A stretch of DNA of 64,000 nt from Heterodontus francisci (Eukaryota), in contig NC_090404.1 in NCBI RefSeq assembly GCF_036365525.1, forward strand, positions 13,420,550-13,484,549. Reading direction: 5' to 3'. Below are positions 2,165 to 47,329 of this stretch, one piece after another (positions within the stretch are counted from its first letter, which is position 1; every line of letters begins with the position of its first letter). Under the pieces are notes generated by a model. It searched no databases. It was not told where the DNA came from and worked only from the letters and a program-made list of their open reading frames with translations. Position numbers and translations under genes: made by a program.

Positions 2165-2639
2165 ATGTTTCTGATAATACTGGCGGCTCTGTTGGACAGT
2201 AAGTACTGAATTATGTTAATCAAGGCAGGTTAGTAGATTGATGCAAAGAGTTTGTACTGGGATTTAATCGAATTAGCTGGGTAAATGGGAGGCTACACAC
2301 ACAGATAGACACACGTTTAGATCAACCTGTTTAACCTCTTGTTCTTTATTCCTCTAACGCCGCAGGCGGACGATGTGCAGATCCAGTCGCTTAGTCTCCA
2401 GTGACAATAACCGTGTCAGAAGGAGGTTCGGATCAGTTAGATTGCGAATATGCAAACCCGGATATTTACAGCATGCAATGGTAACGGCACAGCCTCCAAG
2501 CTGAATTATTAGCAAAGTAGTAGCATTCAAGGACGAAATCTCAGGACAATATCTGGCGGCTGCTGACAAGTCTAAAAAGTACGGGTACCTCAATGTAAGC
2601 GGCCTGAGTGTGGAGGACGCGGCGGTCTGTGCAGTGAGG
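2165..2639 (+). pseudogene. TCR alpha/delta-type V pseudogene (V1)
   Basis: Leader exon 2165-2198 MFLIILAALLD then GTAAGT; V exon 2366-2639 DPVA*SPVTITVSEGGSDQLDCEY..MQW*R..GYLNVSGLSVEDAAVCAVR; stops at 2392 and 2482, a frameshift, and YY missing before the second Cys. Confidence 0.85.
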
Positions 2640-2680
2640 CACAGCGTCAGATAAAAAGCCAAGACTCCGTAGAAAAAACC
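2640..2680 (+). other. degenerate 23-type RSS of V1
   Basis: CACAGCG, ~24-bp spacer, AGAAAAAACC. Confidence 0.75.
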
Positions 2681-2983
2681 TCAGCGGGTTTACAGCTCCG
2701 TTAAGTGCTGGTTGGTGCCTTTATCGGCAGGGTTAGTTCGATGCCAGGTCCACGGAGAACAAACACTGTCAGGTTTCAAATCAATCAGTTGTGTTGTTGT
2801 TTTTACCCTCATTCAAATCAACAGAGAAAACGGTCTGGGAAATCTTGAGACTTAGCTCCGTGCCCTGAGTTATACCGCCTCGGTGCATATCTTGGAGCTC
2901 GACGGTAGATAAGGAGAGTGTTATAAAACTGCCAGCGTTCCGTTAACTGCACAGGCTACACACGGTCAGGAGCAGCCCCGGTA

Positions 2984-3022
2984 GGTTTTTGTACGGTCCC
3001 TGCTGATCTTTGCTGCACCGTG
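2984..3022 (-). other. 23-bp-spacer RSS of V2
   Basis: CACGGTG, exactly 23 bp, perfect ACAAAAACC. Confidence 0.95.
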
Positions 3023-3459
3023 TCTCCATTGCACAGAAATAGGTGGCGGTGTCTGTCACTCGAGTGTCGCGAACAGTCAGAGAGCTGCGCTTCTCTGCTG
3101 TAATGAACCGAGCCGTGATCCTGTTCTGACCACTGGTACCGCTCGCCAGGTGCTGCACAGGTCGGTCCCAGACTTGTCTGTACCATTGTAGGATCCGTCC
3201 TCCAACTGTGGTGGAACAGTTCAAGGATGCAGTGTCTCCCTCGGTAACAAGCACTGACTCCGGAGACTGCGATAGCTCTTCATTGCCAGTGGCATCTGAG
3301 AAAAATATGGAGATATAATATCATATAATTCATATAATATAAAACAATGCAATATAACACACCGAAATAAAATACAACAGAACAGAAGTGACCACACTCA
3401 CACGGAGGGTGGAGTAAGAAATCCAGGGAGATAATAACTAAAGTGAAGCTCAGCTTCAT
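3023..3459 (-). CDS. TRAV: intact TCR alpha/delta-type V gene segment (V2); leader exon 3402-3459, V exon 3023-3295
   Basis: Leader MKLSFTLVIISLDFLLHPP with GTGAGT donor and phase-1 intron; EELSQSPESVLVTEGDTASLNC..LQWYRQ..SSLTVRDTRVTDTATYFCAME; no stops; canonical RSS. Alpha versus delta cannot be settled from this window. Confidence 0.88.
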
Positions 3460-3660
3460 CTTGGATCCCATCCACTTGTGTAAAGTAACTGTCGGCAGAT
3501 CCAGGCGGAGAGAGGCTCCTGGAGAAGGTAGCGCTGTTATGCATCCAAGTGAATCTGACACCAGGACACCGTGCCCGCGGGTGTCTGGGACTTGTGCTCA
3601 CAAAGTGAAGTGTGAGGGAGGTTCAAGCTCACCATTGATGGAGAGTAGGGGGAAAACTCA

Positions 3661-3683
3661 TACGTCAGAGCATCAGTGCGTCA
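3661..3683 (-). promoter_or_regulatory. paired CRE-like sites in the V2 promoter
   Basis: TGACGCA (3677-3683) and TGACGTA (3661-3667) on the minus strand, ~200 bp upstream of the ATG. Confidence 0.5.
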
Positions 3684-3774
3684 CCCTGAATCAAACCCAG
3701 AAATGGAAACAGAGAGAACACAAATAGTGAACAGTGACGGTGAGAACCGCTCAAAGAGGATTCTTTACACACAG

Positions 3775-3789
3775 CCACCAGATGGCGCT
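3775..3789 (+). promoter_or_regulatory. CTCF consensus motif upstream of V2
   Basis: CCACCAGATGGCGCT matches CCASYAGRKGGCRS exactly. Confidence 0.65.
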
Positions 3790-4253
3790 GACAGGCCGCT
3801 GTGTCCCACCACCGGTCCCGTTACCTCAACGAATGTTAACTGGCAGCTCTTTTCATATAAATTAACAGGAACTTGATTTTAACTCTTAGATTTGTATTTA
3901 TTAATATTATATCTTCACTAACACTGTTGTAATTTCACACATTACTTGACTGCAAATGAGCTGGTCACGTCATGCTGACAGTTTCGAAATATTTGCCCTT
4001 GAGAATTACAATTCGGAATGGGTTGGGATTTTTCTGAGTCATCCAACATCTGCTTTCAGCCCCATAGTTCAATCCCAGCTCAGTGGTGAAGGTATTTGTA
4101 GCTAAATAATAACATTGCAAATCCCTTTTCCGAGCTTGGGAGTATCAGGGTTTTTATAGAGAAGTGGAGTTATATTATTTACATTATTTTAAATCATTAT
4201 TTTGTTACTGAAATAATTTCCTCACACTTGTATTGTCTGTGTGCTGTACACAT

Positions 4254-5008: not shown

Positions 5009-5328
5009 ATGGGACATTCACCGTTTTATCCTCATGGGGATATTCTCAACTGAGGAGGCTGGGTAGGAAAATAAAGCTATTGAGAGTTTTGCATGTTCGT
5101 CTTGTATTAACAAAGACCCACGGTGAGGAGAGGATGTCCCAAACCGAGCAGGTGGCGGCGGTGGAGGGGCAAGCGGTTAAAATCCGGTGCGGTGCCAACA
5201 CCAGACGCGATGTTTGGATGACGTGGTACCGGCAGTTACCGGACCTGGGTTTAACACGTTCGGACGGGATATATTACTGTGGGAAGATGTACATTGTAGC
5301 AAACGGTGGGACATCCTGTACAATAACT
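5009..5328 (+). pseudogene. V pseudogene with internal deletion (V4) and degenerate 23-RSS
   Basis: SQTEQVAAVEGQAVKIRC..WMTWYRQLPDLGLTRSDGIYYCGK; frameshifted leader from 5009; TACATTG (5290-5296), 23 bp, ACAATAACT (5320-5328). Confidence 0.8.
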
Positions 5329-5808: not shown

Positions 5809-6009
5809 TTAAACTAAGTTTTAAATAAATTGGTATAATATTCTAAGGCGTTTTTGTCCTATTATTTAGCGTCATTTCAAATGAAATAAATGATAATGGA
5901 AATTCCTGCAATATTCACGTCAGTGGTGGGTTGATCTAACCCCGCAGTAAATAACCGTCCTCGGTAAAATGCATAGAAACGTTACAGATGATTTGGGAGC
6001 AAATATAAT

Positions 6010-8700
6010 GGGCTGGATTTTACCAGCCCCTCGATTCCGAGATGCACCCGCCGCATTTTACCGGCGGCGCTGGCGGGACCTCGGTGCGCCCCGTCCACCA
6101 CCACCCCCCCCCCCCCCCCCGACCCCGTCGCATGGTAGAGGCACCATATGGTAATGCTTACTTACCTATGCTGATTATGCAGCCCGCCTCCACCGACACT
6201 GCCGGATTTTCCGCTGAACGGGCGGCCGTTACATGCCGTCCCGTTCACGATCTGAAAAGATGGCGGGTCCTCACTCTGCATTACCGAAGGAGGAGGGAGG
6301 GGGTGGGTGGGGGGGGGGGTGGTGGTGGGGATACACAGGGGTCTAACTCTGCATTCTGGAAGGGAGGAGGGAGGGGGTTATGCAGGGGTCACACTCTGCA
6401 TTCTGAAAGGAAGGGGGTCTGAGTTTACTGGATAGAAAGATGTGCTGGCATGAAGGGAGGTACCGTGTACCATCCCTCCGTTAACAGTGCAGGCTCTGTG
6501 TTTGTGAGGGGCAATGGTACACTAGGCACCCTGTGTGTGGGAGGGTTCCAGAAAGGGCAGGGGCGTTAAGGTTTTATGGATGGTGGAAGCAATCGACTCA
6601 GCTGGTAGGTCATGCCGTGCCACTCTGAGTGCTGTCCAGGATGGGCAATGCCATGACACGCCACATAGTTGATCCAGGAAAGCAGCTGGTGTACCCGTCA
6701 ACACCAATCCCTGCCCTGTTAGGAACCTTCGAATAATGCAGGGTTCAACTTTATTTATCACATGGAAATAGGTATGGCTCATCCTACATTGTGTGATCCT
6801 CTGCACGTGAGGATCTGTATGCACCAGAGGCAATATCAACAGGCAGGTGCGATCCACGTAGAGGCCCCTGGTCGCGAGCAGCAGCCCCAAAGGGGAGCTC
6901 ATCATTACGTTTGCCGTGCATCTCCAGGCCCCACATGACTTGCCATCGGATGTCAGAGCACCAGTGTCCCAGGAGATTGCGCATATAGAGAGGATGGTGA
7001 CACGACTCTGTGCCCTGCTCAAGGATCACCTGCAGCCCATGGGCTCCTGTGGACATCCCATGCCTTTGTTCCTCATAGTGGCAGCAGTTCTCAAGCCTGG
7101 CGCCCCAGCAGCCTTTCAGGGACCCACCAGAGACTTTTGTGGGGTCACACAGTCAGCATTGCACCGCTGCATCAGGGAGGTCACCAATGCCCTGCACCGG
7201 AGGGCCAGTGAGTATGTCCGCTTCAGGACGGACTCTCACAGCCAGGCCCAGAGGGCCATTGGTTCTGGCACCATTGCCGGAGAACCATAGGGTGTAATGT
7301 TCATAGACTGCATTCATGTGGCCATCAGGTCTCCCGCCAGGCTACCACCTGCAGATATCACCATTAAAGGAGCCCTCTTAATCTAGGTGAAGCTGGTATG
7401 TGATCACCGCAGATACTTGCAGCGAATGTGTGACCGCTTCTCGGGCAGCTGCCATGACACCTGGGTCTTGTGCCAGTCCCGGCTTCCACCGCTGTTCACT
7501 GAACTGGATCAGATGGAGGGGTGGCTTCTTGGAGATAAGGGCTGTCCGTTGCAGACATGCTTCCGAGAGACTCCGAGAGGAGAGATACAACGCCAGCCAC
7601 TGAGCTACCATTGAGCAGGAGATAAGCATGCTGAAAGAGTGCCTCCAATGCCTGTATGGATAGGGTGACGCCCTGTACTACGGGCTGAAAAGGCCAGCTC
7701 CTTTCTTTGCTGCTCTCCACAATTGCGCACCCAATAGGGGCCGGGCCTGGCATGATGAGAAGAGACGCCAACACGATCTCTCCTCGGACTATGTGTATGC
7801 TGAAGCCGTACACCATGAAAGACGCATGGAAGGGCAGATGGCACCCAGGCTCTGCACGCAGGGCTGGCAGTGAGCTAGGGATGTAGGGCAGTGGCTTATC
7901 AGACAAAGGCTGTCTGCTCCATAGGAACCGACACGAGCTCTGCAAGCCACACATCACTTGCTGTGCACCAGTCCACATCTGCAGCATCCCTGTGTAAACC
8001 AATGGAGGCAACAGCTGACTGAGCCAATGTCCACGTCACTGATTCCGTGGAGATGCTCATGAGCAATGGTGGCACAGCAATGATGTTATTACATACGTTG
8101 GCTCTCCTGAAGGGCCAATGGTGCAAAGGGATGTGACATTGGTGCTACATGCTGGCACACATCACTCTCAGAGAAAAGGACACACATGTTGGTGAGGAAC
8201 ATTTAGTGAAAACGTATTTACATTGCTGTGACATCCGTACATTCCCATTTGTGTTAGTGTGTTCTCTGTAAACCTCTGTAATACCTTTTGTGGTCTATTT
8301 AAGTCTCACATCCTGGAATGTGCAAATTTAAGATTATTCACCCAGGTGCGGCACGCCTACAAGAAGGAATGTTACACTTGAGTGGGAGAAGAGGATCACA
8401 ACTTCACAGGACACTGGGACACAGCAGGGTAAGTATGTGGCAGCAAAGCGGAAAGTGCTGGGGTAACTCAGCAGGTCAGGCAGCATCTGTGGAGAGAGAA
8501 GCAGAATTGACTTTCAGGTCTGTGAACTTGGACAACTTAACTCTGCGTCTCTCTCCCCAGATGCTGCCTGACCTGCTGGATTTCTGCAGCACTTTCTGCT
8601 TTGCTTCCAGATTGACAGCAGCCCCACTCTTCAGCAGTCAGGTAAGTATTTCTTTGACAGCTGTCAGGAAGCAGGTGCCAGAGCGCTTAAAATAGGGCCC
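6010..8700 (+). mobile_element. decayed PIF/Harbinger DNA transposon (HARBI1-like DDE transposase ~6900-7790)
   Basis: CGVTQSALHRCIREVTNAL, IDCIHVAI, GSCHD, WLLGDKGCPL and EERYNASH motifs across frameshifts; element ends approximate. Confidence 0.8.
8443..8607. repeat. second palindromic Penelope-derived element
   Basis: cagcaggtcaggcagcatctgtggagagaga ... tctctccccagatgctgcctgacctgctg. Confidence 0.7.
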
Positions 8701-9524: not shown

Positions 9525-9845
9525 GTGCTTTACCTGTCCTGGGAGTGTCTGATGGGGCAGTGTAGAGGGAGCTTTACTCTGTATTTAACCTGTGCTGTAC
9601 CTGCCTGGGGCTGCTTGTGGGGACAGTGTAGAGGGAGCTTTACTCTGTATTTAACCTGTGCTGTACCTGCCTGGGGCTGCTTGTGGGGACAGTGTAGAGG
9701 GAGCTTTACTCTGTATTTAACCTGTGCTGTACCTGCCTGGGGCTGCTTGTGGGGACAGTGCAGAGGGAGCTTTACTCTGTATCTAATTCATACTCTACCT
9801 TCTCTGAGTGTGTGTGATTGGGCAGTGTACAGGCAGCTTTGCTCT
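9525..9845 (+). repeat. 66-bp tandem repeat, ~4.5 copies
   Basis: Unit ggacagtgtagagggagctttactctgtatttaacctgtgctgtacctgcctggggctgcttgtgg; related copies at 25780-25970. Confidence 0.9.
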
Positions 9846-11069
9846 CTTCTTAACTGATGAAGTTCCCAACTTCGATTTTTTGATACGCAATGAAATGTTA
9901 TGTGTGTGCGGATATGTAGATACATAAACATACAGATTAAACCTCAATGGCAAAATATTAATCACATTAGCATCATGGAGTTACTGGATGTTGCTTGATC
10001 TCCATATTTGATGATTCGAGAGGCTGAAAGACTTTCATTCTTACCAAATTATAAATTCAACCAGATCGAATTTTTTTTCTGAAAAAAAACAAAAAATAAA
10101 TAAAAAAATAAATTCAACCAGATAGAACTGTGGAATTATTCCGTGACTTGGGCACACCAGAAAACTGAACAAGAAACCTCAGAATTAATATAGAATAGCA
10201 GCGGTGGAAGCAGTAAAACATTCAAATGGCAGCAGATACAGTGATAATAAAAACAAACAATGACAACTGTACTACCCTAATATAGTAATAGTTCAACATG
10301 ATCATGCAGCTGTGCTCGTTAATGAAATGCAGATCCAATTTTTTCACAGTCGCGAATACATCTTTGGCCAAATCTTGAACAGCCTCTAGTTTAATGATTT
10401 CACAGGTGACAACTGGAGATTACAGGAAATATTTCTGTGTGGTAAATTACAGGTGTTACAGCACGGTTGACTGCCGGAATTATTGTTTTTTCATTAATTC
10501 AGTGTCACCGTATAGTCGGAAGAAGATGATAATAATTCTTCCGTTCAAAATGGTACTTCAATGTGTCATAAACAGACAGGCAGACAATCTCATCAATTGT
10601 TTTGTGACCGGATGTTGTTTTATTATTGATGATAAATTGGAATTATCTGAAAAGTATTTGGACTCCCAAATACCTTCACTCCTCAACAAGAGTGAGATTG
10701 GTAAAACTTTCTGTCAGACATCTAAACTTCTCAACTCACTTTGTGTAAATAATATTTCCTGTATTGGAGCAGCAACGACACCTGGAAAGTATTTCCTTGG
10801 CTGCTAATTGGCGCTTTTGGATGGACTGAGGCCGGGAAAGATGAAGCATCAATCTGCCCCTTTCTATTAAAAATTCGTCCGTGTGATATATCACTCCAGG
10901 GGTTAAGCCTATTGTCCGCCTATTTCCGCGGGGAGCAGTAGAATTTCTTCTTTCCTTTTCTTTGGTTCAATCTGCCTTGTTTGATGAGCGGTCTCTGCCT
11001 CCTGCGACGTCCCAGATTTGGTCTCCAAACTACTCAGAGATTCTCCGCGCTCAAAAGGACCCCCGCAGT

Positions 11070-25230: not shown

Positions 25231-25779
25231 CACTTCTTTTAAAGGGAGATGGAATAAAGCAGGGTGAGAGGATCTCTGGGATAATGTTCAGTGAGTTCGG
25301 GGAGATGGTATCAGAGAGAATTCAGCAGGGAGAGCGGATACCTGGGGTAGTGTTCTGTGTGTTCAGCGCGATGACATCAGAGAAGAGCAGAGAGAAAGGG
25401 CATGAGGGAAACACGTGACAGAGGAGTAGGGACAACGGGTATAACAGAAAAGGTGGAGGCAGAGAGTCCACATGTGCGGAACAGGAAAGTGGAGTCTGTT
25501 GCGTGTCTAACAGAACTAGTGGGGAGAGTGTGATGTGTGTGTATAAGAGAAAATGCGAAGATAGTGTCAATGTTTCAGGTAGGTCTCAAACTCTGGGAAT
25601 CATTCCCTCAGTTTGTGCTCTCTGCTGTGTCAGATAGCATCCGGGCTCCAAGAATCAACCCTTCTTTGTTACATGGGCTTCAGGCTTTGGAAAATATTCC
25701 CAGGGGTTGTCCTCTCCTGTATATTAGATGGGCCCCAGGCTGTGGGATCATTCACAGGGTTCGTGCTCCCTCAAGTATC

Positions 25780-25970
25780 TGTGCTTTATTTAACCTGTGC
25801 TGTACCTGCCCTGGTAGTATTTGATGGGACAGTGTAGAAGGAGATTTACTCTGTATCTAACCCGGGTTGTACCTGCCCTGGGAGTGTTTGATGGGATTGT
25901 GAAGAGGGAGATTTACTCTGTATCTAACCCGGGCTGTACCTGCCCTGGAAACGTTTGATGGGACAATGTT
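25780..25970 (+). repeat. ~66-bp tandem repeat, ~3 copies
   Basis: ctgtacctgccctggg..tttgatgggacagtgtag..tttactctgtatctaacc. Confidence 0.85.
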
Positions 25971-26340
25971 CTTCCATACAATGCTCGACCAGGCAGTGTT
26001 GGAGCAGAGCGCAGCTCTTTAATATAACCTGGCATGTGACTGTGGCAGACGATAAGACAAGAGAAGTCAGCGAGGTGCGCTTGGTCGCGGTGCGGTCATT
26101 CTGCCTCTGGGAAGTGGCATAATGAGGCAGAGGAAAAAGTGTCCTTATTCTGATGAGACTCTCGAAGGTGCAGCGTTCCTTCACCGAAGGGCCGGGGGTT
26201 CAAAGACAGCCCAGACAGGACTTTTAAAAAATAGCTGTCAGGAAAGATGGGGAAAACATATAACAGGGGACATGAAGCGCAGTGGAGGGACCTTGGGCAA
26301 GGAATTCAGTCAAGTCCAAGTTCGCATATGTTATTCAAGA

Positions 26341-26346
26341 TTTATT
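26341..26346 (-). terminator. candidate polyadenylation signal of membrane IgM mRNA
   Basis: AATAAA on the minus strand ~250 bp after the TM2 stop. Confidence 0.6.
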
Positions 26347-26592
26347 AACAACTTCAAAAACAACATTTTTTACAGAGAAGACTTGTTTCAAAAAAGGATC
26401 CAAAATGAATATAACAACTGTGCATCACATTGAGAACAGAACACATGCGGTCTGAGCAGAAATGTTTATGATTTTCCCAGCTACAGATTCGGAACCATAA
26501 ACCGAAGGAATTTTGCTTTTACAGTTTTTTTTTTGGTAATACAGAGATGTTATAAAAATGACGAAAATCCAGGGCGGCCGAAATTCAATCAT

Positions 26593-26601
26593 TCACTTGA
26601 C
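26593..26601 (-). CDS. IGHM: IgM TM2 exon (VK*)
   Basis: cttttacag|GTC AAG TGA completes the KVK cytoplasmic tail. Confidence 0.9.
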   Translation of the reverse strand, partial: VK

Positions 26602-26746: not shown

Positions 26747-26874
26747 CTTCACCAGAGTGACAGCAGCACTGTAGAAAATGCTCAGGAAGAACAGGATGAT
26801 GAATGCGGAAGCGGTTGTCCAGATGTTGCCGCTCTCTTCCTCATTGTCTTCAATCCAGATGTGGTCTGAGGAAT
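26747..26874 (-). CDS. IGHM: IgM TM1 exon
   Basis: DSSDHIWIEDNEEESGNIWTTASAFIILFFLSIFYSAAVTLVK with the CART motif; AG acceptor and GTGAG donor. Confidence 0.95.
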
Positions 26875-27454
26875 CTACGGGGATGTAGAGGAGAAGATGT
26901 ATTTACATCGTTTATTAATCCAGGATATAAAATTGTTATTTTGCATTCGCAGTTCTCTTCCTTAAGCTATTATTTTGTTCCCGAATTTCGTTTTCAATGT
27001 GTATCTATTGTTAAGTTAATCACTTTCGGCAATCTATCTCTGTTACGAACTCCACAGCCATTCTTCCTTTATGATCCTCGTCCAGGTCGTGTTGGAAAAT
27101 GTGACAAGTTTTTTTTCCTTTAGTGTCAGGCGCTATTTTATTTTGGTTTAATCACCATTAGGGATTATTATGGTGAGATATTGAGGGAGGTTTACTGATC
27201 AATAATAATTATTTTGAAGATAGGTTCAGACAGCTACTTATTTGGAGATTGTCAATGTTGTTGGGTAAGCGATTGGAGGTGATTTCCAATCTTGTTTGTT
27301 TATTTGTGATGAAAGTCGTTGGTAAATCATTAACTTATCTCAGTTTCTAAGCGAGAACATTGCTTCATTGTGACTGCAGGTCCAACATGTATTGGGGAAA
27401 GTGATGGAGACGGTGTCTGTTCAAATAGTGCATTTGAATTCTGTTTTCGAATAT

Positions 27455-28380
27455 AGTCTGGCGTTTTTGTTTGTGTGTTTTAGTGTTTGTGTCTGTGTGT
27501 ATGAGTATCTTTTGCTTTGCATTACTCTCTGTTTGTGTATCCATGTGTGCGTGTGTGTGAGTGTTAATGAGTGTTTCTATTTGTTTGTTTGTGTACCTAA
27601 GTGTGAGTGTATTAGTGTGTTTTTTGACATATTGATGACTGTCTGTATGTCTCCATGTATGTTAATATGTGTTAATATACCAATGTGCATTGATGTGTAT
27701 ATTCAGGTGACTGCCTGTGTGTGTGTGTGTATGTGTGTTGTGTCTATCTGACCATGTGCGTATTTGAGAGTGTTAATATTTGTTTTTGCGTCTGTTTGTG
27801 TCCCCATGAGTTTGTTAATTTGTCTTTCTGTTTTGTTGGATGTGTTTATGTCTCCCTGTAAGTTAAAGTGTATTCATGTGTCAATGTTTATAAGGGGTGT
27901 GATATGTGCTTGTGTATGTCTCCATGTTCCCCCAAAAGTGTGATAATGTGTGTTTATATGTTGATATCTACATTTATGCATTAATACGTGTGCTAATGTG
28001 TGGTTATGTGTACATATATGCTAATGTATGTGTTTATGTGCGTGATTGTGTATCCATGTGTGTGTGTCAGTATAGTAATGTTTGTGTCTATTTGTGAGTG
28101 AATGTGTCTATTTATCTATGTGTTTGTGTGCACGTGTGTGAGTCTGTTAATGTATGAGTATGTGCGTCCATGTATGTGTGTTAATGTGTATCCTAGTGTG
28201 TGCGTTTATGTCTATATTTCTGTGTACGTGAGACGGCACTAACGTGAGTCTTTATGTTTGTGTGTGTGACTGTGGGAGCATTTATATCAGCATTTGGGTC
28301 TGTTCCTGTGTGCAGGTGCATGACTGCGTTAGTGCATGTGAGTGTGTTTATGTGTGTGGTCGTGTCAGTGTGCCTGTGCA
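27455..28380. repeat. degenerate (TG)n low-complexity tract in the CH4-TM1 intron
   Basis: ~0.9 kb of imperfect TG dinucleotides. Confidence 0.9.
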
Positions 28381-29421
28381 TTTTTATTATTTTTCAAAAG
28401 TTCCACAGTGAACCAATAACCAGGTCTGGCCTTGACGGTGTGCATTGTAGAGAATATTGTGAACTGTTCTGTGCATAAATGTGTTCTGTGTGAGTTTAAA
28501 TATTCCATCAGCTGACTGCATTCAGCAATGCACCTGCTGGGCCTCAGAAACGTCAGGAATACAAGTGTGAAAAAACAGAGGAGGGTTCTATCACCAGTTA
28601 GATTTGGACTATTAGAATTCAATCTGTTCGAATAAAATTAACAGGGAAAAGTTTAACGATTGTGTATTGCATACTTATATATTTTACAATATTATTCCCA
28701 AGTGGAAAAGTTAAAACCTTTGCACGGAGAGCTAGAAGCCGACTTTGTAGTTATGGCAACTGAGTAGATATATTAGAGAGCAGTTGCCTTCCGATCTCTC
28801 TGCCGGGGCAGTGGGAGTATAATGGGTTAACAAATGCCCTTGCTCCTTTCTCTGTTGAACAATGCAATGGGCTGCAGTCGGTTCACCATTGCCTTTTCCC
28901 TCTCTCTATTGGAGAAGTGGAGTTACAATGGATTAACAATTGTCCTTTTCCTGTCACTGTTTAGGAAGTGGTGGTGCGGTGGGTTAATAAATTGTCCTTT
29001 GCCTCTTTCTGATGGGAGGATTTTGGGTAGAGTTCATATTCGTGTGTGGCCCTCATTTCAGCTCCCAGTGGATGCAATGCTACAACTTAAAACTGACTCC
29101 TATTCGGAAAGGATGAACAACAGGAGAAGAAGGAGCACCGAGATCTAAATGTCCTGCGTTTGTTTGTTCGAAAAGGGAAAATTTTAGATTTCCCCCCAAC
29201 AGGAGGAAATTTGCTGAAGGTACTCTACAGAATTCTGTAATGAATCCGCTTCCTATCGATAACCTGTGGTGTATCTGAGCTGGGAGCACTGGTTCTACAA
29301 GGCCCTGGACCCGAGACCTGCAAATATCTTACTTTAGATGAATAGACCTACCTGTAGCAAATGTGGGAAGCAAAATTAATTGAGCGGCTGTGTATTTAAA
29401 TCGCGATTGACAGAAAATATC

Positions 29422-29437: not shown

Positions 29438-29465
29438 TAAGATCTGAAATGCAATCGAGAGATTC

Positions 29466-29857
29466 TCATTGACATGAATTGACAGTGTCCAACAGTGCAA
29501 GGGAAATGTTCACAAAACTCGGTTTACCGCTGGATTTATTCACTGTTCTGTTGATGATTTTCAAGAGGATCGCTTCATGTCCCACCACACAGGAGTAAGA
29601 AGCGCCGTTGGCCCACTCCTCCGCTGCAATGGATAACTGGCTGTAGATGAAGTAGGAGCTGTTGTCGTTCTCCGCCATCACCTCGGTGTTCTTGTAGTTG
29701 CCGGGATTCACCGACTTGTCATTGACGGTCCACTTGACGAAGATCTCTCGGGGGGAGAAACCTCTCACTAAGCAGGTGAGGGAGAGGAACCTCTGAGCGG
29801 AGACTTCTTCTGCCGGGGGCAGGAGGACAGATACGGACGGTTCCCGCGGATTTGGAA
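29466..29857 (-). CDS. IGHM: IgM Cmu4 exon plus secretory tailpiece
   Basis: [62 protein letters not shown]; internal G|GTAAA donor at 29528 for TM splicing; penultimate Cys. Confidence 0.96.
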
Positions 29858-30357: not shown

Positions 30358-30666
30358 CTTCTTCCTTGTGGATGGAATCTCTGAGTGGAGTCGGCAGATC
30401 CTGATGGCTCACCACGCAGTAGAACTCATTCCCTCTCAGCCAGGATTGTGTCGAGATGTTTACGGTGCTGATCACGCTGTCGGGATCCTCTCCGGGTTGG
30501 ACGGCAGTCTCTGATTTCAAAGGCTTCATTTCTTGGGTCCAGGGCACGTTGACTCCATAAGGAGCATTAGACACGACGCAGGTTAAAGTCACCGTCGCCT
30601 CCAGTAAGGCCTGTTCTATTGATGGTGGCAGTAGTTTAATTACTGGATTATTGCACAGGGAAAGAT
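30358..30666 (-). CDS. IGHM: IgM Cmu3 exon
   Basis: [51 protein letters not shown]; 309 nt, phase 1/1, canonical splice sites. Confidence 0.95.
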
Positions 30667-31209: not shown

Positions 31210-33520
31210 GGTAAAAGGAACATAGGGAAACGAGGAGGCCATTCAGCCCCTCGAGCCAGTTCCGCCATTGAATTCCGTCCACCCATATGTAACCCTTAAT
31301 AAATCTATCAGTCTCAACAGTAAAATATTCAGTTGGTGCCAAGGCTCAACAGCGAGTTGGGGGAGGGAATTCCAGATTTATGCTACCCCCTGCGTGAATG
31401 GAGTAATAGAGCACAGAAACAGGCCCGTCGGCCCATCGTGTCCGTGCCGGCCATCAAGCACCTAACGATTCTAATCCCATATTCCTGCACTTGGCCTGTA
31501 GCCTTGTATGCTATGGCGTTTCAAGTGCTTATCTAAATACTTCTTAAATGTTGTGAGGGTTCCTGCCTCTACCACCTCTTCAGGCAGTACGTTTCAGATT
31601 CCAACCACCCTCTGGGTGAATTTTTCCCCTTAAATCCCCTCTAAACCTCCTGCCCCTTACCTTAAATCTATGCCCCCCTGGTTATTGACCCTTCCATGAA
31701 GGGAAAACGTTTCTTCCTATCTGACCTATCAATGCCACTCATAATTTTGTATACCTCAATCATGTCCCCCCTCAGCCTTCTCTGCTCTAAAAGAAAACAA
31801 CCCTAGACTTTTCAGTCTCTCTTCATAGCTGAAATGCTCCAGCTCAGGCAACACCCTGGTGAATCTCCTCTGCACCCTCTCCAGTGCAATCACATTGTTC
31901 CTATATTGTGGTGCCCAGAACTATACAAAGTATTCCAGCTGTGGCCTAACTAGCGTTTTATACAGCTGCATCATAACCTCCCTGCTCTTATATTCGAGTC
32001 ATAGAGAAATGCAGCACTAAAACAGGCCCGCTGGCCCACTGAGTCCGTGCCAACCATCAATCACCCATTCATGCTGATCCTACATTAGTCATACTTTTCC
32101 ATTTTACGCCTCCACCGTCCCTCAATTCTCCTACCACCTACCTACACTAGGGACAATTGTTACAATGGCCGATTTATCTATCAACCTGCAAGTCTTTGGC
32201 ATGTGGGAGAAAACCCAAACTGTCACAGGGAGAACTTGCAAACCCAGAACTGAAGCTGTGAGGCTGTGGTGCGAGCCACTGCGCCACTCTGCCGCCCACG
32301 CCAACCCTTGGCTGAGAAAGGCAAGTATCCCATATGCTTTCCTAACCACCTTATCTACCTGTGCTGCTACCTTCAGTGATCGATGGACAAGTACACCAAG
32401 GTCCCTCTGACCTTCTGTACCTCCTAGGGTCCTACCATCCATTGTATATCCCCTTGCCTTGTTAGCCCTCCCAAAATGCATCACCTCACACTTCTCAGGA
32501 TTAAATTCCATTTGCCACTGCTCTGCCCGACTTACCAGCCCATCTATATCGTCCTGTAATCTAAGGCTTTCCTCATCACTATTTACGACACCACCAATTT
32601 TCGTGTCATCTGCAAACTTACTTATCATACCTCCTATATTCGCGTCTAAATCATTAACGTACACTACAAACAGCAAGGGTACCAGCACCGATCCCTGCGG
32701 TACACCACTGGTCACAGGCTTCCACTCACAAAAACAACCCTCGACCATCTCCCGATGCCTCCTGCCACTAAGCCAATTTTGGATCCAATTTGCCCAATTG
32801 CCCTGGATCCCATGGGCTCTTACCTTCTTAACCAATCTCCCATGCGGAACCTTATCAAAAGCCTTACTGAAGTCCATATAGACTACATCAACTGTTTTAC
32901 CCTCATCTACACATCCAGTCACCACCTCGAAAAATTCAATCAAGTTAGTTAGACACGATCTCTCCATGACAAAGCCATGCTGGCTATCTCTGATTAATCC
33001 CTGCCTCTCCAAGTGGAGATTAATCTTGTCTCTCAGAATGTTTTCCAATAGTTTCCCAACCACTGATGTTAGACTGACCGGCCTGTAATTACCTGGTTTA
33101 TCCCTGCTACCCTTCTTGAATAATGGCACCATATTCGCTGTCCTCAGTTCTCTGGCACCTCTCCTGTGGCCAGAGAGGATTTGAAAATTTGTGTCAGAGA
33201 CCCTGCTATCTCCTCCCTTCCCACACATAACAGCCTCACATAATAGCCCCTTCCTGATATCATCCCTGAATGACCTTGGTCTGATCTGAAGGTTATGCCC
33301 CTTTGTTCTGGAGTCCCCAACCAGAGGAAATATTTTTCTCCACTGACTCCATGAATTCGAGTAAACATCTTAAGCACCTCAATTATATCACCCTTTAATC
33401 TTCGACACTGAAAGGGATACCAGTTTGGTCTGTGAAACCTGTCCTCATAATTTAACCCATTCAGCCCCGCTACCATTCTAGTGAATTTGTGTTGCACTAG
33501 TCCCAAGACTTCCTGAGCTC
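31210..33520 (-). mobile_element. CR1 fragments in the Cmu2-Cmu3 intron
   Basis: ORF 32131-33228 is a CR1 RT core (NYRPVSLTS, QHGF, DFSKAFD, GVPQGS, FADD). Confidence 0.9.
32010..32300 (-). mobile_element. HE1/V-SINE-like tRNA-derived SINE
   Basis: Minus strand gtggcgcagtgg..cacagcctcacagc..ttgcaagttctccctgtgac..ccaaagacttgcaggttgatag. Confidence 0.7.
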
Positions 33521-33901: not shown

Positions 33902-34219
33902 CCTGAGATCCGGTGATGTTTCGGCTTTGGGTGACTCCTTGATGGGAGACCTGGCAGGTATAGACCGTGTTGGTGAACCATTCCCTAGCGGGGACTGTCA
34001 GCCGACTGGTCGCCGAGAAGGTCCCGTTCACTCCACAGGTGGGAGATGTGACGAAGCCCGATTCCATGTGTTGTCCATCCTTCAACCAACTCACGGTTAT
34101 TGACTCTGGATGGAAATCGATGATTGAACACAAGACAGTTGCAAATCTGCTGCTTGTGATTTCTTCACTGGAACTCTGGGTGAGGATAACAGTTGGATGG
34201 ACCTTGTCACCTTTACAAT
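33902..34219 (-). CDS. IGHM: IgM Cmu2 exon
   Basis: [54 protein letters not shown]; 318 nt, canonical splice sites. Confidence 0.96.
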
Positions 34220-34430: not shown

Positions 34431-34727
34431 CTGGAATTTCCTTGATCCAGACTGACTCTCCGCGTCGAACGTCGCAGTAGATTTTGCTGTTTCCCACCTC
34501 TGACTCGGTGATGGTTAACTGGCTGCTCCGGATGTAGGTTCCCTTCTTGTTCAGCACTGACGGGTAACTCTTCAATCCAGTGGTGATCGGCTGTTTATCT
34601 TTCTTCCAGGAAACGCTGGTGATTTGGGGGATGTAGTCCATCGCCAAACAGCCGTAGGCCACGGAGCCGTCTGTGTTGGGTTGTTCACAGGAGCAAAGAC
34701 CGTAAAGGGTTGGCGGAGATGGTGTCA
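34431..34727 (-). CDS. IGHM: IgM Cmu1 exon
   Basis: [49 protein letters not shown]; 297 nt, canonical splice sites. Confidence 0.96.
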
Positions 34728-40914: not shown

Positions 40915-41895
40915 TCTTTCAAACAGTTTTGAACACGTAGAATGTTTCCATTCGATCAGAAAACCTGGAGCCACTCGATGTCACCGAGATTAAACAAAGC
41001 AGAAACGCCAGTTTCACAAATTTTACTTATTCAAAGTAACATAGACACACACTCTCCACAGCAGATAAACACCAAATCACATCACTGAGGAACTGAATCC
41101 TGCCTCAGTACATTTAATGGAGAAACAGCTTAATTCTACAAACACTTTCAGCAGAATCAAATGTAACATTGCAAAAAAAAACTCAACACAGAATCCATCG
41201 AGCCCGCCTATCTCTGAACGAACTAATCGTTAAAATAACCAGAAATATAAGATCGTGGTAGCAGAATTGTTAGTACAGAGAGTATGCTTAACAAATTAAT
41301 ATTGATACTGGAGCATATTTCATATATATTGGCTGATATCACTGCATTATAATAAGTGAGGTTATGTTAATGTAAATCTGACCAAAGCTGCAAATTTGTT
41401 ATTTGTGTCGTTCTTAATTACATCAAAATTTATTGTATTACGTATGAGCATTCGTGAGCAGTAGATTGATAGATGGCAATTTAGTTACCACAAATAAAAA
41501 TAGATCAAAATATCATAAGGCTATTTTTGACCGCTGAAGCTTTCTGCATACAATCTTATTTCAAACACATTTAAACACTTATTGTTTGCATTAGATCAGA
41601 AAACCTGCAGCAACTGGATGTCATCAAGGTTAAACATTATAGAAACGTGAAACAGTTTAACAACAGTTAGATATTTAAAGTATCCCAGACACACAGTCTC
41701 AACAGCAAATAAACACGAAATCACATCAGTCAGGGGCCGAAACGCTCAACATTACCGTCTGTGGAGATGTCATTAAATTCTTTAATGCCTTTACAGCAAA
41801 ATCACGTGAAACATTGCAACAAATCTCAATACAGAATCCACCGAATCCACATTTCAGTGAACAAATGTATCATTAAAATAAACAGAATTATAAAA
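40915..41895. repeat. diverged ~330-bp direct duplication (40915-41252 and 41560-41892)
   Basis: Shared ordered blocks gatcagaaaacctg, agacacaca, aaatcacatca, aacattgcaa, acagaatcca, ttaaaataa. Confidence 0.8.
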
Positions 41896-41941
41896 TAAAA
41901 ACACAAATAAATCAGTTACTGAATAAGTGCCTGTTTCTTAC

Positions 41942-41989
41942 CTGCAGTCACCGTCACCATGGTCCCTTGCCCCCAGTTGCCAAGATAGT
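41942..41989 (-). CDS. IGHJ: IgH J segment
   Basis: YLGNWGQGTMVTVTA then GTAAG donor. Confidence 0.95.
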
Positions 41990-42028
41990 CACGGTGTTAT
42001 ATTCCCTGGGCTGGGTCACACAATAACC
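41990..42028 (-). other. JH 23-RSS
   Basis: Read on the plus strand: CACGGTG, 23 bp, ACAATAACC. Confidence 0.92.
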
Positions 42029-42366
42029 GGCTCTGCACAGAACAGAGAGAAATCCTTCATTATTTTAAATATCCACAGCCCAGAGGCAAAATAAAATGAT
42101 GATGGTTTTTCGGAAAATTATAACTGTGTTCATGATTCTTTTCACTCTTTATAAATTTCCCTGATGTTTTATATTTCACACAGTAACATGTCAGCAATTA
42201 TTGAAATCACCAACTGATGAATGAATAATTAATCAGTTTATCCATAATTAACCGTGCTAGGAGGACAGTGCTGGACACAAATAGTGTTTCACTGTATATA
42301 CAGTTGGATTGTAAAGCGAGCACTGACGCAGACTCATCAATTAGCGCTGAGTGACTTTTTGTATTG

Positions 42367-45300
42367 TTGGATACTGTTGAGGGAGATGGTTCACCAGGGG
42401 AAGGCAGCAAGAGCCAGGTTCATGGCACCGTGGCTGGCTCTGCTGTTCAGAAGGGCGGCAAAAAGAGTGGAAGGGCTCCAGTCATAGGGGATTCGATTGT
42501 AAGGGGAGTAGATAGGCGGTTCTGTGGTCGAAAACGAGACTCCCGAATGGTATGTTGCCTCCCAGGTGCACGGGTCAGGGATGTCTCAGATCGGCTGCAG
42601 AACATTCTGAAGGGGGAGGGTGAACAGCCAGTTGTTGTTGTGCACATAGGCACCAATGATATAGGTAAAAAACGGGATGAGGTCCTACAAGCAGAATTTG
42701 GGGAGTTAGGAGCCTAGGTTAAAAAGTAGGACCTCAGAGGTAGTAATCTCAGGATTGCTACCAGTGCCACGTGATAGTCAGAGTAGAAATGAAAGAATAG
42801 TCAGGATGGATGCATGGCTTGAGAGATGGTGCAGGAGGGAGGGGTTCAGATTTTTGGGACATTGGGACCAGTTCTGGGGGAGGTGGGACTATTACAAATT
42901 GGACGGTCTACACATGGGCCGGACTGGAACCAATGTCCTTGAAGGTGCTTTTGCTAACGCTGTTGGGGAGGGTTTAAACTAATGTGGCAGGGGGTTGGGA
43001 ACCAAATGAGGAGGTCAGTGGAGGTAGTAACTAAAGCCTGTAAGGAACTAGATAATGAAGTCAGCGTGACTAAGGGAAAGAGTAGGCAGGGAGCAGATGA
43101 TGAAAGCAAAGGGACTGGTGGTCTGAGGTGCATTTGTTTTAATGCAAGAAGTGTAGTAGGTAAGGCAGACGAACTTAGGGCTTGGATTAGTACCTGGGAG
43201 AATGATGTTAATGCTATTACTGAGACTTGGTTAAGGGAAGGGCATGATTGGCAACTAAATATCCCAGGATATCGATGCTTCAGGCGGGATAGAGAGGGAG
43301 GTAAAAGGGGTGGAGGAGTTGCATTACTGGTCAAAGAGGATATCACAGCTGTGCTGAAGGAAGGCACTATGGAGGACTCGAGCTGTGAGGCAATATGGGC
43401 AGAACTGAAGGGTGCGGTAACAATGTTGGGGCTGTACTACAGCCTCCCAACAGCGAGCGCGAGATAGAGGTACAAATATGTAAACAGATTATGGAAAGAT
43501 GTAGGAACAACAGGGTGGTGGTGATAGGAGATTTTAATTTTCCCAACATTGACTGGGATTCACTTAGTGTTAGAGGTCTAGATGGAGCAGAATTTGTAAG
43601 GAGCATCCAGGAGGGTTTTCTAGAGCAGTATGTAAATAGTCCAACTCGGGAAGGGGCCATACTGGACCTGGTGTTGGGGAATGAGCCCGGCCAGGTGGTT
43701 GAAGTTTCAGTAGGGGACTACTTTGGGAATAGTGATCACAATTCCGTAAGTTTTAGAATACTCATGGACAAAGATGAGAGCGGTCCTAAAGGAAGAGTGC
43801 TAAATTGGGGGAAGGCCAACTATACCAAAATTCGGCAGGAGCTGGGGAATGTAGATTGGGAGCAGCTGTTTGAAGGTAAATCCACATTTGATATGTGGGA
43901 GGCTTTTAAAGAGAGGTTGATTAGCGTGCAGGAGAGACATGTTACAGTGAAAATGAGGAATAGAAATGGCAAGATTAGGGAACCATGGATGACAGGTGAA
44001 ATTGTGAGACTAGCTAAGAGGAAAAAGGAAGCATACATAAGGTCTAGGCGGCTGAAGAAAGACGAAGCTTTGGAAGAATATCGGGAATGTAGGACCAATC
44101 TGAAATGAGGAATTAAGAGGGCTAAAAGGGGTCATGAAATATCTTTAGCAAACAGGGTTAAGGAAAATCCCAAAGCCTTTTATTCATATGTAAGGAGCAA
44201 GAGGGTAACTAGAGAAAGGATTGGCCCACTCAAGGATAAAGGAGGAAAGTTATGCGTGGAGTCAGAGAAAATGGGTGAGATTCTAAACGAGTACTTTGCA
44301 TCGATATTCACCGAGGAGAGGGACATGACGGATGTTGAGGTTAGGGACAGATGTTTGATTACTCTAGGTCAAGTCGGCATAAGGAGGGAGGAAGTGTTGG
44401 GTATTCTAAAAGGCATTAAGGTGGACAAGTCCCCAGGTCCGGATGGGATCTATCCCAGGTTACTGAGGGAAGCGAGAGAGGAAATAGCTGGGGCCTTAAC
44501 AGATATCCTTGCAGCATCCTTAAACACGGGTGAGGTCCCGGAGGACTGGAGAATTGCTAATGTTGTCCCCTTGTTTAGGAAGGGTAGCAGGGATAATCCA
44601 GGTAATTATAGACCGGTGAGCCTGACGTCAGTGGTAGGGAAGCTGCTGGAGAAGATACTGAGGGATAGGATCTATTCCCATTTGGAAGAAAATGGGCTTA
44701 TCAGTGATAGGCAACATGGTTTTGTGCAGGGAAGGTCATGTCTTACCAACTTAATAGAATTCTTTGAGGAAGTGACAAAGTTGATTGATGAGGGAAGTGC
44801 TGTAGATGTCATATACATGGACTTCAGTAAGGCGTTTGATAAGGTTCCCCATGGTAGGCTGATGGAGAAAGTGAAGTCGCATGGGATCCAGGGTGTACTA
44901 GCTAGATGGATAAAGAACTGGCTGGGCAACAGGAGACAGAGAGTAGCAGTGGAAGGGAGTTTCTCAAAATGGAGACGTGTGACCAGTGGTGTTCCACAGG
45001 AATCCGTGCTGGGACCACTGTTGTTTGTGATATACATAAATGATTTGGAGGAAAGTATAGGTGGTCTGATTAGCAAGTTTGCAGACGACACTAAGATTGG
45101 TGGAGTAGCAGATAGTGAAGGGGACTGTCAGAGAATACAGCAGAATATAGATAGATTGGAGAGTTGGGCAGAGAAATGGCAGATGGAGTTCAATCAGGGC
45201 AAATGCGAGGTGATGCATTTTGGAAGATCCAATTCAAGAGTGAACTATACAGTAAATGGAAAAGTCCTGGGGAAAATTGATGTACAGAGAGATTTGGGTG

Positions 45301-46004
45301 TTCAGGTCCATTGTTCCCTGAAGGTGGCAACGCAGGTAAATAGAGTGGTCAAGAAGGCATACGGCATGCTTTCCTTCATCGGACGGGGTATTGAGTACAA
45401 GAGTTGGCAGGTCATGTTACAGTTGTATAGGACCTTGGTTCGGCCACATTTGGAATACTGCGTGCAGTTCTAGTCGCCACATTACCAAAAGGATGTGGAT
45501 GCTTTGGAGAGGGTGCAGAGGAGGTTCGCCAGGATGTTGCCTGGTATGGAGGGCGCTAGCTATGACGAGAGGTTGAGTAGATTAGGATTATTTTCATTAG
45601 AAAGGCGGAGGTTGAGGGGGGACCTGATTGAGGTGTACAAAATCATGAGAGGTATAGACAGGGTGGATAGCAAGAAGCTTTTTCCCAGAGTGGGGGATTC
45701 AAATACTAGGGGTCACGAGTTCAAAGTGAGAGGGGAAAAGTTTAGGGGGATATGCGTGGAAAGTTCTTTACGCAGAGGGTGGTGGGTGCTTGGAACGCGT
45801 TGCCAGCGGAGGTGGTAGATACGAACACGATAGCGTCTTTTAAGATGTATCTAGACAGATACATGAATGGGCAGGAAGCAAAGAGATACAGACCCTTAGA
45901 AAATAGGCGACATGTTTCGGTAGAGGATCTGGATCGGCGCAGGCTTGGAGGGCCGAAGGGCCTGTTCCTGTGCTGTAATTTTCTTTGTTCTTTGTTCTTT
46001 GTTC
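42367..46004 (+). mobile_element. young 5'-truncated CR1 LINE (SGNH ORF1, APE, RT) between D2 and JH
   Basis: VIGDSIVRG..VVHIGTNDIG; CFNARS..ITETW; 405-aa RT ORF at 44256-45473; few disablements; (TTCTTTG)n tail; TTTGTATTG at both ends (42358-42366, 46005-46013). Confidence 0.95.
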
Positions 46005-46065
46005 TTTGTATTGACAGTAACTGCTGTGCCACCCCAGCACAGTGAGACAAACCGTGTCAAATACT
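46001..46065 (-). other. IgH D2 segment (core 46029-46037, CTGGGGTGG) with 12/12 RSSs
   Basis: 5' RSS read outward CACAGTG-12-TCAAATACT; 3' RSS CACAGCA-12-ACAAAGAAC, with the nonamer partly supplied by the CR1 tail. Confidence 0.9.
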
Positions 46066-46372
46066 GCGGCGCACTGTTAACTGTAAAATACAGAGATTAA
46101 ATTCCACAGCATTCTCAAAAACCTGATTCCGACTGCCCTAAGAGTGCAGCAGTGAGATAATTCCGTTAGTACGGGTCATTATATTTATAAAGGGGATTGG
46201 AACACTTCTGAAACATCTGTCCTGCTTTCACGTGACAGTTAACGTTAATAAAGCAGGAAACTTTTGTCCATTTTTACAAATCCATATCACGTTTCCCCAT
46301 TGTTTCTATCTTCTCCTCATTTTTTTCGACCTCTCTGCAGTGATAGTGATCACAGGTTTGAGCAAACTCCCA

Positions 46373-46453
46373 GGTTCTTGTATGAGGAACTCGCTCTGTA
46401 CAGTACCGTGACCCACTGCTGTGTCCACAGTGACACGAACCAGCATAAATACT
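46373..46453 (-). other. IgH D1 segment (core 46411-46425, GACACAGCAGTGGGT) with 12/22 RSSs
   Basis: 5' RSS CACAGTG-12-ATAAATACT; 3' RSS CACGGTA-22-ACAAGAACC. Confidence 0.92.
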
Positions 46454-46813
46454 ACACTCACTCTGTTCAGTACTGCCTCTCAACATTCACTTCAAATAGA
46501 AATTCATTTCAGATCTTGTTCAAAATATATGTAAAAGTTCACACCACCCAGTAAGAAGTAAACACAACTCCAAGTAACTCCCTACAGTTATCAGTCACGT
46601 TGAAACTAGTATCTTATCCAGGTCTGCAATTGCTGACACTGTTAACAAATCAGCATAGCCAAAATTACTCATCAGTATATCAGGCAGTGTCAACCACTGA
46701 ACTTTCACTGTGTTAGTTTTGTAAGAAACGGTATATGGTCTGGTTCTGAACACTGCCGTTAATATTACATTTAATACAATTACTGATGGGATTTGTAGAA
46801 TTCCCTCTCCATC

Positions 46814-46852
46814 TGTTCTTGTACGGGTCCAGCCCTGGTTCCTCTCGCTGTG
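46814..46852 (-). other. VH 23-RSS
   Basis: CACAGCG, 23 bp, ACAAGAACA. Confidence 0.92.
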
Positions 46853-47329
46853 GTATCTTGCACAGTAATACATGGCGGTGTCTTCAGTCTTCAGGTCCTT
46901 CATGTCCAAAGCGAAGATGTTGTTTGAAGTGTCTTTGGACGCAGTAAATCGATCCTTAATCCCTGGGGCGTAGTTATTACTTGATGAACTGAGGTACTCA
47001 AGCAGCCACTCCAGCCCCTGCCCGGGAACCTGTCAGACCCAGTTCATCCAGTCACTGCCAAGACTGAACCCGCTGGTTTTACAGGTCAGTCTCAGGGAGG
47101 CTCCGGGTTTCCCGGTCTCTGCCTCCGGCTGAGTCAACACGATATCCGACTGGACACCTGTAAAAAATATCAAAAACCCCGAGGATTAATCCTGGTGAAA
47201 TGATTCCTGACTCTGTAACATTCCAGAGAGAGACTAACACTGAGACAGTAACAGTGAGAGACTCGAACAATAAAACTACTCACTGGATAAGAAAACCAGT
47301 AACAGACAGAGAGAAATCGCTGACCTCAT
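46853..47329 (-). pseudogene. IGHV: IgM VH segment with one nonsense codon; leader exon 47284-47329, V exon 46853-47157
   Basis: MRSAISLCLLLVFLS; [79 protein letters not shown]; TGA at 47033-47035. Confidence 0.95.

What the first reader, a model, noticed from the sequence alone, without database searches (positions are those of the whole stretch)
2165..47329. Complete IgM heavy-chain cluster contiguous with a TCR alpha/delta-type V array
Seen: no gap separates the TCR-type Vs (2.2-5.3 kb) from a full VH-D-D-JH-Cmu-TM cluster starting at 26.3 kb. VH and intact V2 share strand and 23-RSS type. Known: sharks make IgVH-TCRdelta chimeric rearrangements, and Ig-like Vs occur in their TCR alpha/delta locus. 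Inference: VH or VH-D1 (22-RSS) could join TCR D/J in cis. Conversely, plus-strand TCR Vs could join the 12-RSS IgH Ds by inversion and use the intact Cmu, giving TCR-V/IgM chimeras. A whole cluster with secretory and membrane exons this close to TCR Vs bears on the shared origin of IgH and TCR delta.
Basis: partly seen in the sequence, partly recalled or inferred. Interest (0 to 1): 0.82.

Follow-up and report, generated by a model that had tools for sequence, protein, structure and literature searches.

The report
Shark IgM cluster beside TCR V genes
A shark-type IgM antibody gene cluster lies 21 kb from three T-cell-receptor-type V segments, but this layout was published for sharks and rays in 2025, and here the cluster's own V gene and the two TCR V genes placed to make a hybrid chain are dead.

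Summary
The layout is real. A minus-strand VH-D1-D2-JH-Cmu1-4-TM1-TM2 minicluster (47329 to about 26340) lies in gap-free sequence with three TCR-type V segments at 2.4-5.3 kb.

Two details change the reading:
- **The cluster is complete in layout only.** VH has an in-frame TGA at the conserved FR2 arginine (47035-47033). A 3.6-kb CR1-like LINE sits between D2 and JH.
- **Only V2 of the three V segments is intact.** V1 and V3, the two plus-strand V segments that could join the IgH D segments by inversion, are pseudogenes. V3 also has no recombination signal sequence (RSS).

V2 lies downstream of Cmu in the same orientation as the cluster, so a V2-D1 coding joint would form on an excised circle. 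A VH-to-TCR-delta product from this VH would carry the stop codon.

RNA-type contigs from the same animal show many VDJ joints of this VH/JH family. None can be assigned to this cluster.

Close IgH/TCR alpha-delta linkage, with TCR alpha/delta-type V exons between IgH clusters, was published for four elasmobranchs (Flajnik et al. 2025, PMC12227049). This scan has also noted the same arrangement at many other places in this genome. The finding is a local, partly decayed example of a known architecture. Interest is low.

The parts
47284..47329 (-). VH leader exon: ATG at 47329, GTGAGT donor from 47283. A TATA-like TATTTAAATA lies about 90 bp upstream.
46853..47157 (-). VH V exon, with an in-frame TGA at 47035-47033 where the conserved FR2 Arg (CGA) is expected. 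Otherwise open, ending YYCARY.
   Evidence: Pfam V-set; PDB VH hits
46814..46852 (-). VH RSS: CACAGCG, 23-bp spacer, ACAAGAACA
46373..46453 (-). D1 (46425-46411, 15 nt) with a 5' 12-RSS (46426-46453) and a 3' 22-RSS (46410-46373)
46001..46065 (-). D2 (46037-46029, 9 nt) with a 5' 12-RSS (46038-46065) and a 3' 12-RSS (46028-46001). The 3' nonamer ACAAAGAAC overlaps the LINE tail repeat.
42361..46000 (+). CR1-like LINE (endonuclease and RT ORFs, high-copy family) inserted between D2 and JH. The 5' end is approximate.
   Evidence: Pfam; read depth 1e5-1e6; diverged copies elsewhere in the window
41942..42028 (-). JH (41989-41942, WGQGTMVTVTA, GTAAGA donor) with a 5' 23-RSS (41990-42028)
34431..34727 (-). 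Cmu1 exon, open
   Evidence: Pfam C1-set
33902..34210 (-). Cmu2 exon, open. The acceptor is at 34210, or in frame at 34219.
   Evidence: Pfam C1-set
31568..33168 (-). Diverged copy of the same LINE family (RT) in the Cmu2-Cmu3 intron
30358..30642 (-). Cmu3 exon, open
   Evidence: Pfam C1-set
29466..29857 (-). Cmu4 exon with the secretory tailpiece and stop codon. A cryptic GGTAAA donor for membrane splicing lies at 29528.
   Evidence: Pfam; aligns to solved IgM C-mu-4 plus tailpiece
26747..26874 (-). TM1 exon
26340..26601 (-). TM2 (GTC AAG TGA, 26601-26593), 3' UTR and AATAAA at 26345-26340
5131..5289 (+). V3: V-set remnant. FR1 to FR2 runs straight into YYC (about 45 codons lost). No recognisable RSS. 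Pseudogene.
   Evidence: Pfam V-set below cut-off; PDB
2984..3459 (-). V2: intact TCR alpha/delta-type V. Leader 3459-3402, intron, V exon 3295-3023 with Cys23, Trp41 and YFC. RSS 3022-2984 is CACGGTG, 23-bp spacer, ACAAAAACC.
   Evidence: Pfam V-set; PDB TCR alpha/delta hits; Atlas TRAV/TRAV-DV clusters
2395..2679 (+). V1: decayed V with at least 3 stops, a frameshift and the YY/YF before Cys lost. RSS 2640-2679 is CACAGCG, 24-bp spacer, AGAAAAAAC.
   Evidence: PDB

Best explanation

The IgM cluster is a 21-kb VH-D1-D2-JH-Cmu-TM minilocus of the classical shark type. As assembled it cannot make a heavy chain from its own VH, because of a CGA-to-TGA nonsense mutation in FR2. It also carries a young LINE between D2 and JH.

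The neighbouring V group is one intact TCR alpha/delta-type V (V2) and two dead ones. If V2 is used at all, it would be by long-range rearrangement to TCR D/J elements outside the window, not by joining this cluster.

Shown: the layout, the RSS types, the open or broken frames, and the family assignments. Inferred: the consequences for recombination (from RSS geometry and the 12/23 rule) and the silence of this cluster.
For: - Layout and RSS pattern.
- Domain families.
- Mu-type C4 and tailpiece.
- VH type.
- V2 is TCR alpha/delta type.
- V1 and V3 are decayed.
- LINE identity and high copy number.
- Removing the LINE restores about 400 bp between D2 and JH, within the published 250-500 bp spacing (PMC5192425).
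- Contigs at single-copy depth from reads of the same sample match 46082-46846 and 47234-47365 with no differences.
Against: - The TGA rests on the assembly alone. The laid contigs neither show nor exclude another letter at 47035; one DNA contig stops at 47034 with its last letter unaligned.
- Contiguity across 5-26 kb was not tested with spanning reads.
- Expression of V2 was not tested.
- The position and orientation of TCR D-J-C relative to the window are known only from unchecked scan notes.
Confidence: 0.85

Rival explanations
1. The window is a working hybrid substrate. Its TCR-type V segments join the IgH D segments to give TCR-V/IgM chains, or its VH or VH-D1 joins TCR-delta D/J in cis to give VH/TCR-delta chains.
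For: - RSS spacer types are compatible, and the plus-strand V segments have the right geometry for inversion.
- VH-to-TCR-delta rearrangements are documented in nurse shark (cited in PMC6795676, and PMC12227049).
Against: - V1 and V3 are pseudogenes, and V3 has no RSS.
- V2's orientation would put a V2-D1 coding joint on an excised circle (geometry).
- VH has an in-frame stop.
- All listed RNA joints are ordinary VH-to-JH joints.
- No TCR D, J or C was found in the window.
Confidence: 0.04
2. The juxtaposition is an assembly artefact. Repeats between 5 and 26 kb joined an IgM cluster to unrelated V segments.
For: - The interval is rich in retroelement fragments.
- No spanning read evidence was obtained. 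The laid contigs are short and cover only 41.8-47.4 kb.
Against: - There is no gap in the interval.
- LINE copies within the window are only 68-80% alike, too diverged to collapse a long-read assembly.
- The same neighbourhood is published in four other species.
- Unchecked scan notes report it at many other places in this genome.
Confidence: 0.04
3. The VH stop codon is a base-call error or one allele of a polymorphism, and the cluster is a functional IgM gene in at least some haplotypes.
For: - It is a single CpG transition. Every other element is intact, including all splice sites and both TM exons.
- One DNA contig ends at 47034 with its next letter unaligned, so a variant among copies or alleles at 47035 is possible.
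- The VH/JH family is strongly expressed.
Against: - No alternative letter at 47035 reached the reporting threshold in either DNA run.
- Pseudogene IgM clusters are known in sharks (PMC5192425).
- The LINE insertion in the D2 3' RSS region also suggests relaxed constraint.
Confidence: 0.12

Closest known systems
Elasmobranch antigen-receptor complex: IgM, IgW and IgNAR clusters linked to TCR alpha/delta (Flajnik et al., Sci Adv 2025, PMC12227049)
   Same: An IgH minicluster lies within tens of kb of TCR alpha/delta-type V exons. One V here (V1) has features between TCR and Ig types, as the paper describes. The paper already invokes this proximity to explain VH-to-TCR-delta rearrangement.
   Different: [quoted passage not shown] Earlier scan notes name this genome as horn shark; my tools gave only coded organism names. 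The paper does not describe this cluster's defects. Linkage to PSMB5, UrIg2 and TCR C genes cannot be seen from this window.
Classical shark IgM minicluster, VH-D1-D2-JH-Cmu (review PMC5192425)
   Same: Same segment order, four C exons, secretory tail, two TM exons, and about 390 and 370 bp between VH-D1 and D1-D2. The 23 / 12-22 / 12-12 / 23 RSS pattern matches what I recall for horn shark clusters (from my own knowledge, not checked against a paper here).
   Different: VH has a nonsense codon. D2-JH spacing is 4.0 kb instead of 250-500 bp because of a LINE. A second LINE fragment sits in the Cmu2-Cmu3 intron.
Inverted V downstream of the constant gene that rearranges by inversion in TCR beta and delta loci (noted in PMC12227049; the segment names TRBV30 and TRDV3 are from my own knowledge)
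   Same: V1 and V3 lie downstream of Cmu in opposite orientation. That is the geometry which allows inversional joining to a D 5' 12-RSS.
   Different: Both are pseudogenes and V3 has no RSS. No such IgM product is known.

Membership tests
Elasmobranch IgM heavy-chain minicluster | Order VH-D1-D2-JH-Cmu on one strand within about 20 kb | tested here: met
   47329 to 26340, minus strand
Elasmobranch IgM heavy-chain minicluster | RSS pattern VH 23; D1 12 and 22/23; D2 12 and 12; JH 23 | tested here: met
   The D2 3' nonamer is partly LINE tail.
Elasmobranch IgM heavy-chain minicluster | Four C1-set constant exons, a mu secretory tailpiece with penultimate Cys, and TM1 and TM2 exons | tested here: met
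   Pfam; PDB IgM alignment over residues 6-128; TM exons
Elasmobranch IgM heavy-chain minicluster | Functional member: every coding segment is open | tested here: not met
   TGA at 47035-47033 in VH FR2
Elasmobranch IgM heavy-chain minicluster | Rearranging segments 250-500 bp apart | tested here: not met
   VH-D1 is 390 bp and D1-D2 is 373 bp, but D2-JH is 4040 bp because of the LINE (spacing rule from PMC5192425)
TCR alpha/delta V gene segment (V2) | Split leader, V-set exon with Cys23, Trp41 and Cys104, and a 3' 23-RSS | tested here: met
TCR alpha/delta V gene segment (V2) | Closest in sequence to TRAV/TRDV rather than to Ig or TRB/TRG V | tested here: met
   The best single-domain PDB hits are TCR V-alpha, then delta. 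The nearest Atlas clusters are TVA11, TVAZ2 and TRAV/DV. No shark reference set was available.
TCR alpha/delta V gene segment (V2) | Rearranges to TRAJ or TRDD/TRDJ and is expressed with C-alpha or C-delta | not tested
Antigen-receptor complex (PMC12227049) | TCR alpha/delta-type V exons lying between or next to IgH clusters | tested here: met
   V1-V3 lie 21-24 kb from the cluster's 3' end with no gap
Antigen-receptor complex (PMC12227049) | Same scaffold as the TCR alpha/delta D-J-C genes and PSMB5 | not testable with these tools
   Only the 64-kb window can be read. Scan notes place TCR C and NAR-TCR about 4.9-5.5 Mb away (unchecked).

The most novel reading that the evidence does not exclude
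The intact D1-D2-JH-Cmu-TM part of this VH-dead cluster is rescued by a V from elsewhere. The donor would be another cluster's VH or an inverted TCR-type V outside the window, joining the D1 5' 12-RSS by inversion. This would give productive chimeric heavy chains and would make IgM clusters with dead VH genes acceptors for foreign V segments.
Probability: 0.03. Interest if true: 0.75.

Novelty: new member of a known kind. Interest (0 to 1): 0.2.

Why it matters
It adds one more locus, and possibly one more species, to the published picture of shark IgH clusters lying among TCR alpha/delta V genes. That picture bears on the common origin of IgH and TCR delta and on VH-to-TCR-delta rearrangements. 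This locus adds little mechanistically, because the segments that could form hybrids are dead. Its use is as a catalogue entry: a pseudogenised cluster with a dated LINE insertion and one intact TCR V that can be tested for use.

Tried and rejected
- **Word-based protein search with the V2 exon** found nothing. The length filter and sparse shark V entries explain this, so it is not evidence of novelty.
- **Self-tblastn of the window** with its own V, C and TM exons found no further Ig or TCR domain exons beyond V1-V3 and the cluster. The queries were the window's own Ig exons, so diverged TCR C exons and short D or J segments could be missed.
- **Octamer search** found no ATGCAAAT near the VH promoter. 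I draw no conclusion from this.
the one ORF scanned has no Pfam match, and the six-frame read shows nothing Ig-like beyond a YFC-like motif. Not pursued.
- **Reads to test the VH stop and assign transcripts to this cluster:** contigs are too short and the paralogues too similar.
- **Criscitiello 2010 (PMC3222143)** is not held. I cited it through reviews instead.
Exons were searched singly, by reference.
- **Species:** run organisms are coded, so I could not name the species. 'Horn shark' comes only from earlier scan notes.
Full report
**Observation.** The window has one N run, at 49123-49252, so the stretch 2.2-47.3 kb is gap-free.

A full shark-type IgM minicluster lies on the minus strand:

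| Element | Coordinates | Notes |
|---|---|---|
| Leader exon | 47329-47284 | |
| VH exon | 47157-46853 | |
| VH RSS | 46852-46814 | CACAGCG, 23-bp spacer, ACAAGAACA |
| D1 | 46425-46411 | 5' 12-RSS and 3' 22-RSS |
| D2 | 46037-46029 | 12-RSS on both sides |
| JH | 41989-41942 | WGQGTMVTVTA, GTAAGA donor, 5' 23-RSS at 41990-42028 |
| Cmu1 | 34727-34431 | |
| Cmu2 | 34210-33902 | |
| Cmu3 | 30642-30358 | |
| Cmu4 with secretory tail | 29857-29466 | cryptic GGTAAA donor at 29528 |
| TM1 | 26874-26747 | |
| TM2 | 26601-26593 | encodes VK-stop |
| Poly(A) signal | 26345 | AATAAA |

Pfam assigns V-set to VH and C1-set to each C exon. The VH piece matches heavy-chain V domains in the PDB. Cmu4 plus tail aligns across C-mu-4 and the tailpiece of solved IgM.

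- VH has an in-frame TGA at 47035-47033. It sits where the conserved FR2 arginine of WVRQ is expected, and a CGA-to-TGA CpG transition would explain it.
- D2 and JH are 4040 bp apart because a CR1-like LINE lies on the plus strand at about 42361-46000. It has endonuclease and RT ORFs (Pfam) and belongs to a family with read depth of 1e5-1e6.
- Without the LINE the D2-JH spacing is about 400 bp, inside the published 250-500 bp range (PMC5192425).
- The LINE's tail repeat now supplies most of the D2 3' nonamer.
- A diverged copy of the same LINE family lies in the Cmu2-Cmu3 intron.

**The TCR-type V segments.**
- **V2 (minus strand)** is intact. It has a leader at 3459-3402, a 106-nt intron and a V exon at 3295-3023 with Cys23, Trp41 and YFC. 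Its RSS at 3022-2984 is CACGGTG, a 23-bp spacer and a perfect ACAAAAACC. Its best single-domain PDB matches are TCR V-alpha and then V-delta. The nearest ESM Atlas clusters are TRAV and TRAV/DV families.
- **V1 (plus strand, 2395-2639; RSS 2640-2679 with a 24-bp spacer)** has at least three stops and a frameshift, and has lost the YY/YF before the second Cys. Its N-terminal piece matches only TCR alpha V, weakly. Its FR3 piece matches VH best. This fits the 'intermediate' V segments described in the literature.
- **V3 (plus strand, 5131-5289)** runs from FR2 straight into YYC. About 45 codons are missing and it has no recognisable RSS.

A tblastn scan of the window with its own Ig exons found no other V or C exon. 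Because the queries were the window's own exons, diverged TCR C exons and short D or J segments could be missed.

**Geometry.** Read in the cluster's orientation, the order is VH, D1, D2, JH, Cmu, TM, then V3 (inverted), V2 (same sense), V1 (inverted).
Both inverted V segments are dead.
- V2's RSS and the D1 5' RSS point away from each other, so their coding joint would lie on an excised circle.
- Joining V2 to the D2 3' 12-RSS by inversion would place V2 tail-to-tail with D2.
- A VH-to-TCR-delta joint satisfies the 12/23 rule, but it would carry the FR2 stop.

These points are inferences from the RSS positions and the 12/23 rule.

**Reads.** I laid four runs from one sample on 41800-47400.
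- DNA contigs at single-copy depth (12-19) match 46082-46846 and 47234-47365 with no differences.
- VH and JH have 5-10 times that depth, which reflects paralogous clusters.
- The two RNA-type runs hold many joints between JH (41975-41978) and the VH end (46855-46861) with varied inserted letters. These are ordinary VDJ transcripts of this VH/JH family.
- None can be assigned to this cluster. The one leader-V splice contig listed has other letters at the junction, so it comes from a paralogue.
- No alternative letter at 47035 reached the reporting threshold. One DNA contig stops at 47034 with its last letter unaligned. The stop codon is therefore an assembly-level observation that I could not confirm independently.

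**Contiguity.** The 5-26 kb interval is made of retroelement fragments. The LINE copies within the window are only 68-80% identical to each other, so repeat collapse is unlikely. No spanning reads were examined.

**Known context.**
- Flajnik et al. [quoted passage not shown]
- They state that TCR alpha/delta-type V exons lie between IgH clusters and that other V segments are intermediate between TCR and Ig.
- They use this proximity to explain VH-to-TCR-delta rearrangements.
- Those rearrangements are also cited in PMC6795676 and PMC5192425.
- Horn shark is not mentioned in the 2025 paper.

**Earlier scan notes.** They report the same IgM/TCR-V neighbourhood at many places over about 10 Mb of this genome. 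They also report further V genes just before the window's start and a TCR C/NAR-TCR region about 4.9-5.5 Mb away. I checked the cited paper myself. I could not check the positional notes.

**Verdict.** The layout is real and the cluster is structurally complete, but its VH is dead and a LINE interrupts it. Only one of the three TCR-type V segments is intact, and it is not placed to join the cluster. The finding is a new local example of a published architecture, and the proposed cis chimeras are not supported for these segments.

Noticed in passing
window 42354-42362 and 46001-46028: The LINE between D2 and JH appears to have landed in the D2 3' RSS. The nonamer now in place (ACAAAGAAC, 46009-46001) is mostly LINE tail repeat. 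A nonamer-like ACAAAAAGT sits at the LINE's other end (42362-42354), as if the original nonamer had been displaced.
   Followed up: partly
window 9525-9845, 25258-25383 and 25787-25965: Tandem arrays of a 66-67-bp unit occur at three places between the V group and the cluster's 3' end. They are probably SINE- or satellite-like.
   Followed up: no
I saw only a YFC-like motif at about 10.39-10.45 kb. The one ORF scanned (10379-10804) has no Pfam match. UrIg2, a non-rearranging V-C gene, is known in this complex, so a proper profile search could be worthwhile.
   Followed up: partly
window 6000-8000: A GC-rich block (GC 0.565 against about 0.43 nearby) has long overlapping ORFs on both strands and no Pfam match. 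It is possibly a decayed DNA transposon.
   Followed up: partly
window 27390-28400: A low-complexity TG/CA-rich stretch downstream of the Cmu4 secretory end produces several spurious RSS-like hits and Cys/Val-rich ORFs.
   Followed up: no
window 47418-47700: The VH promoter region has a TATA-like TATTTAAATA but no canonical octamer. The nearest is a 7-of-8 match (ATGCAATT) about 250 bp upstream.
   Followed up: partly
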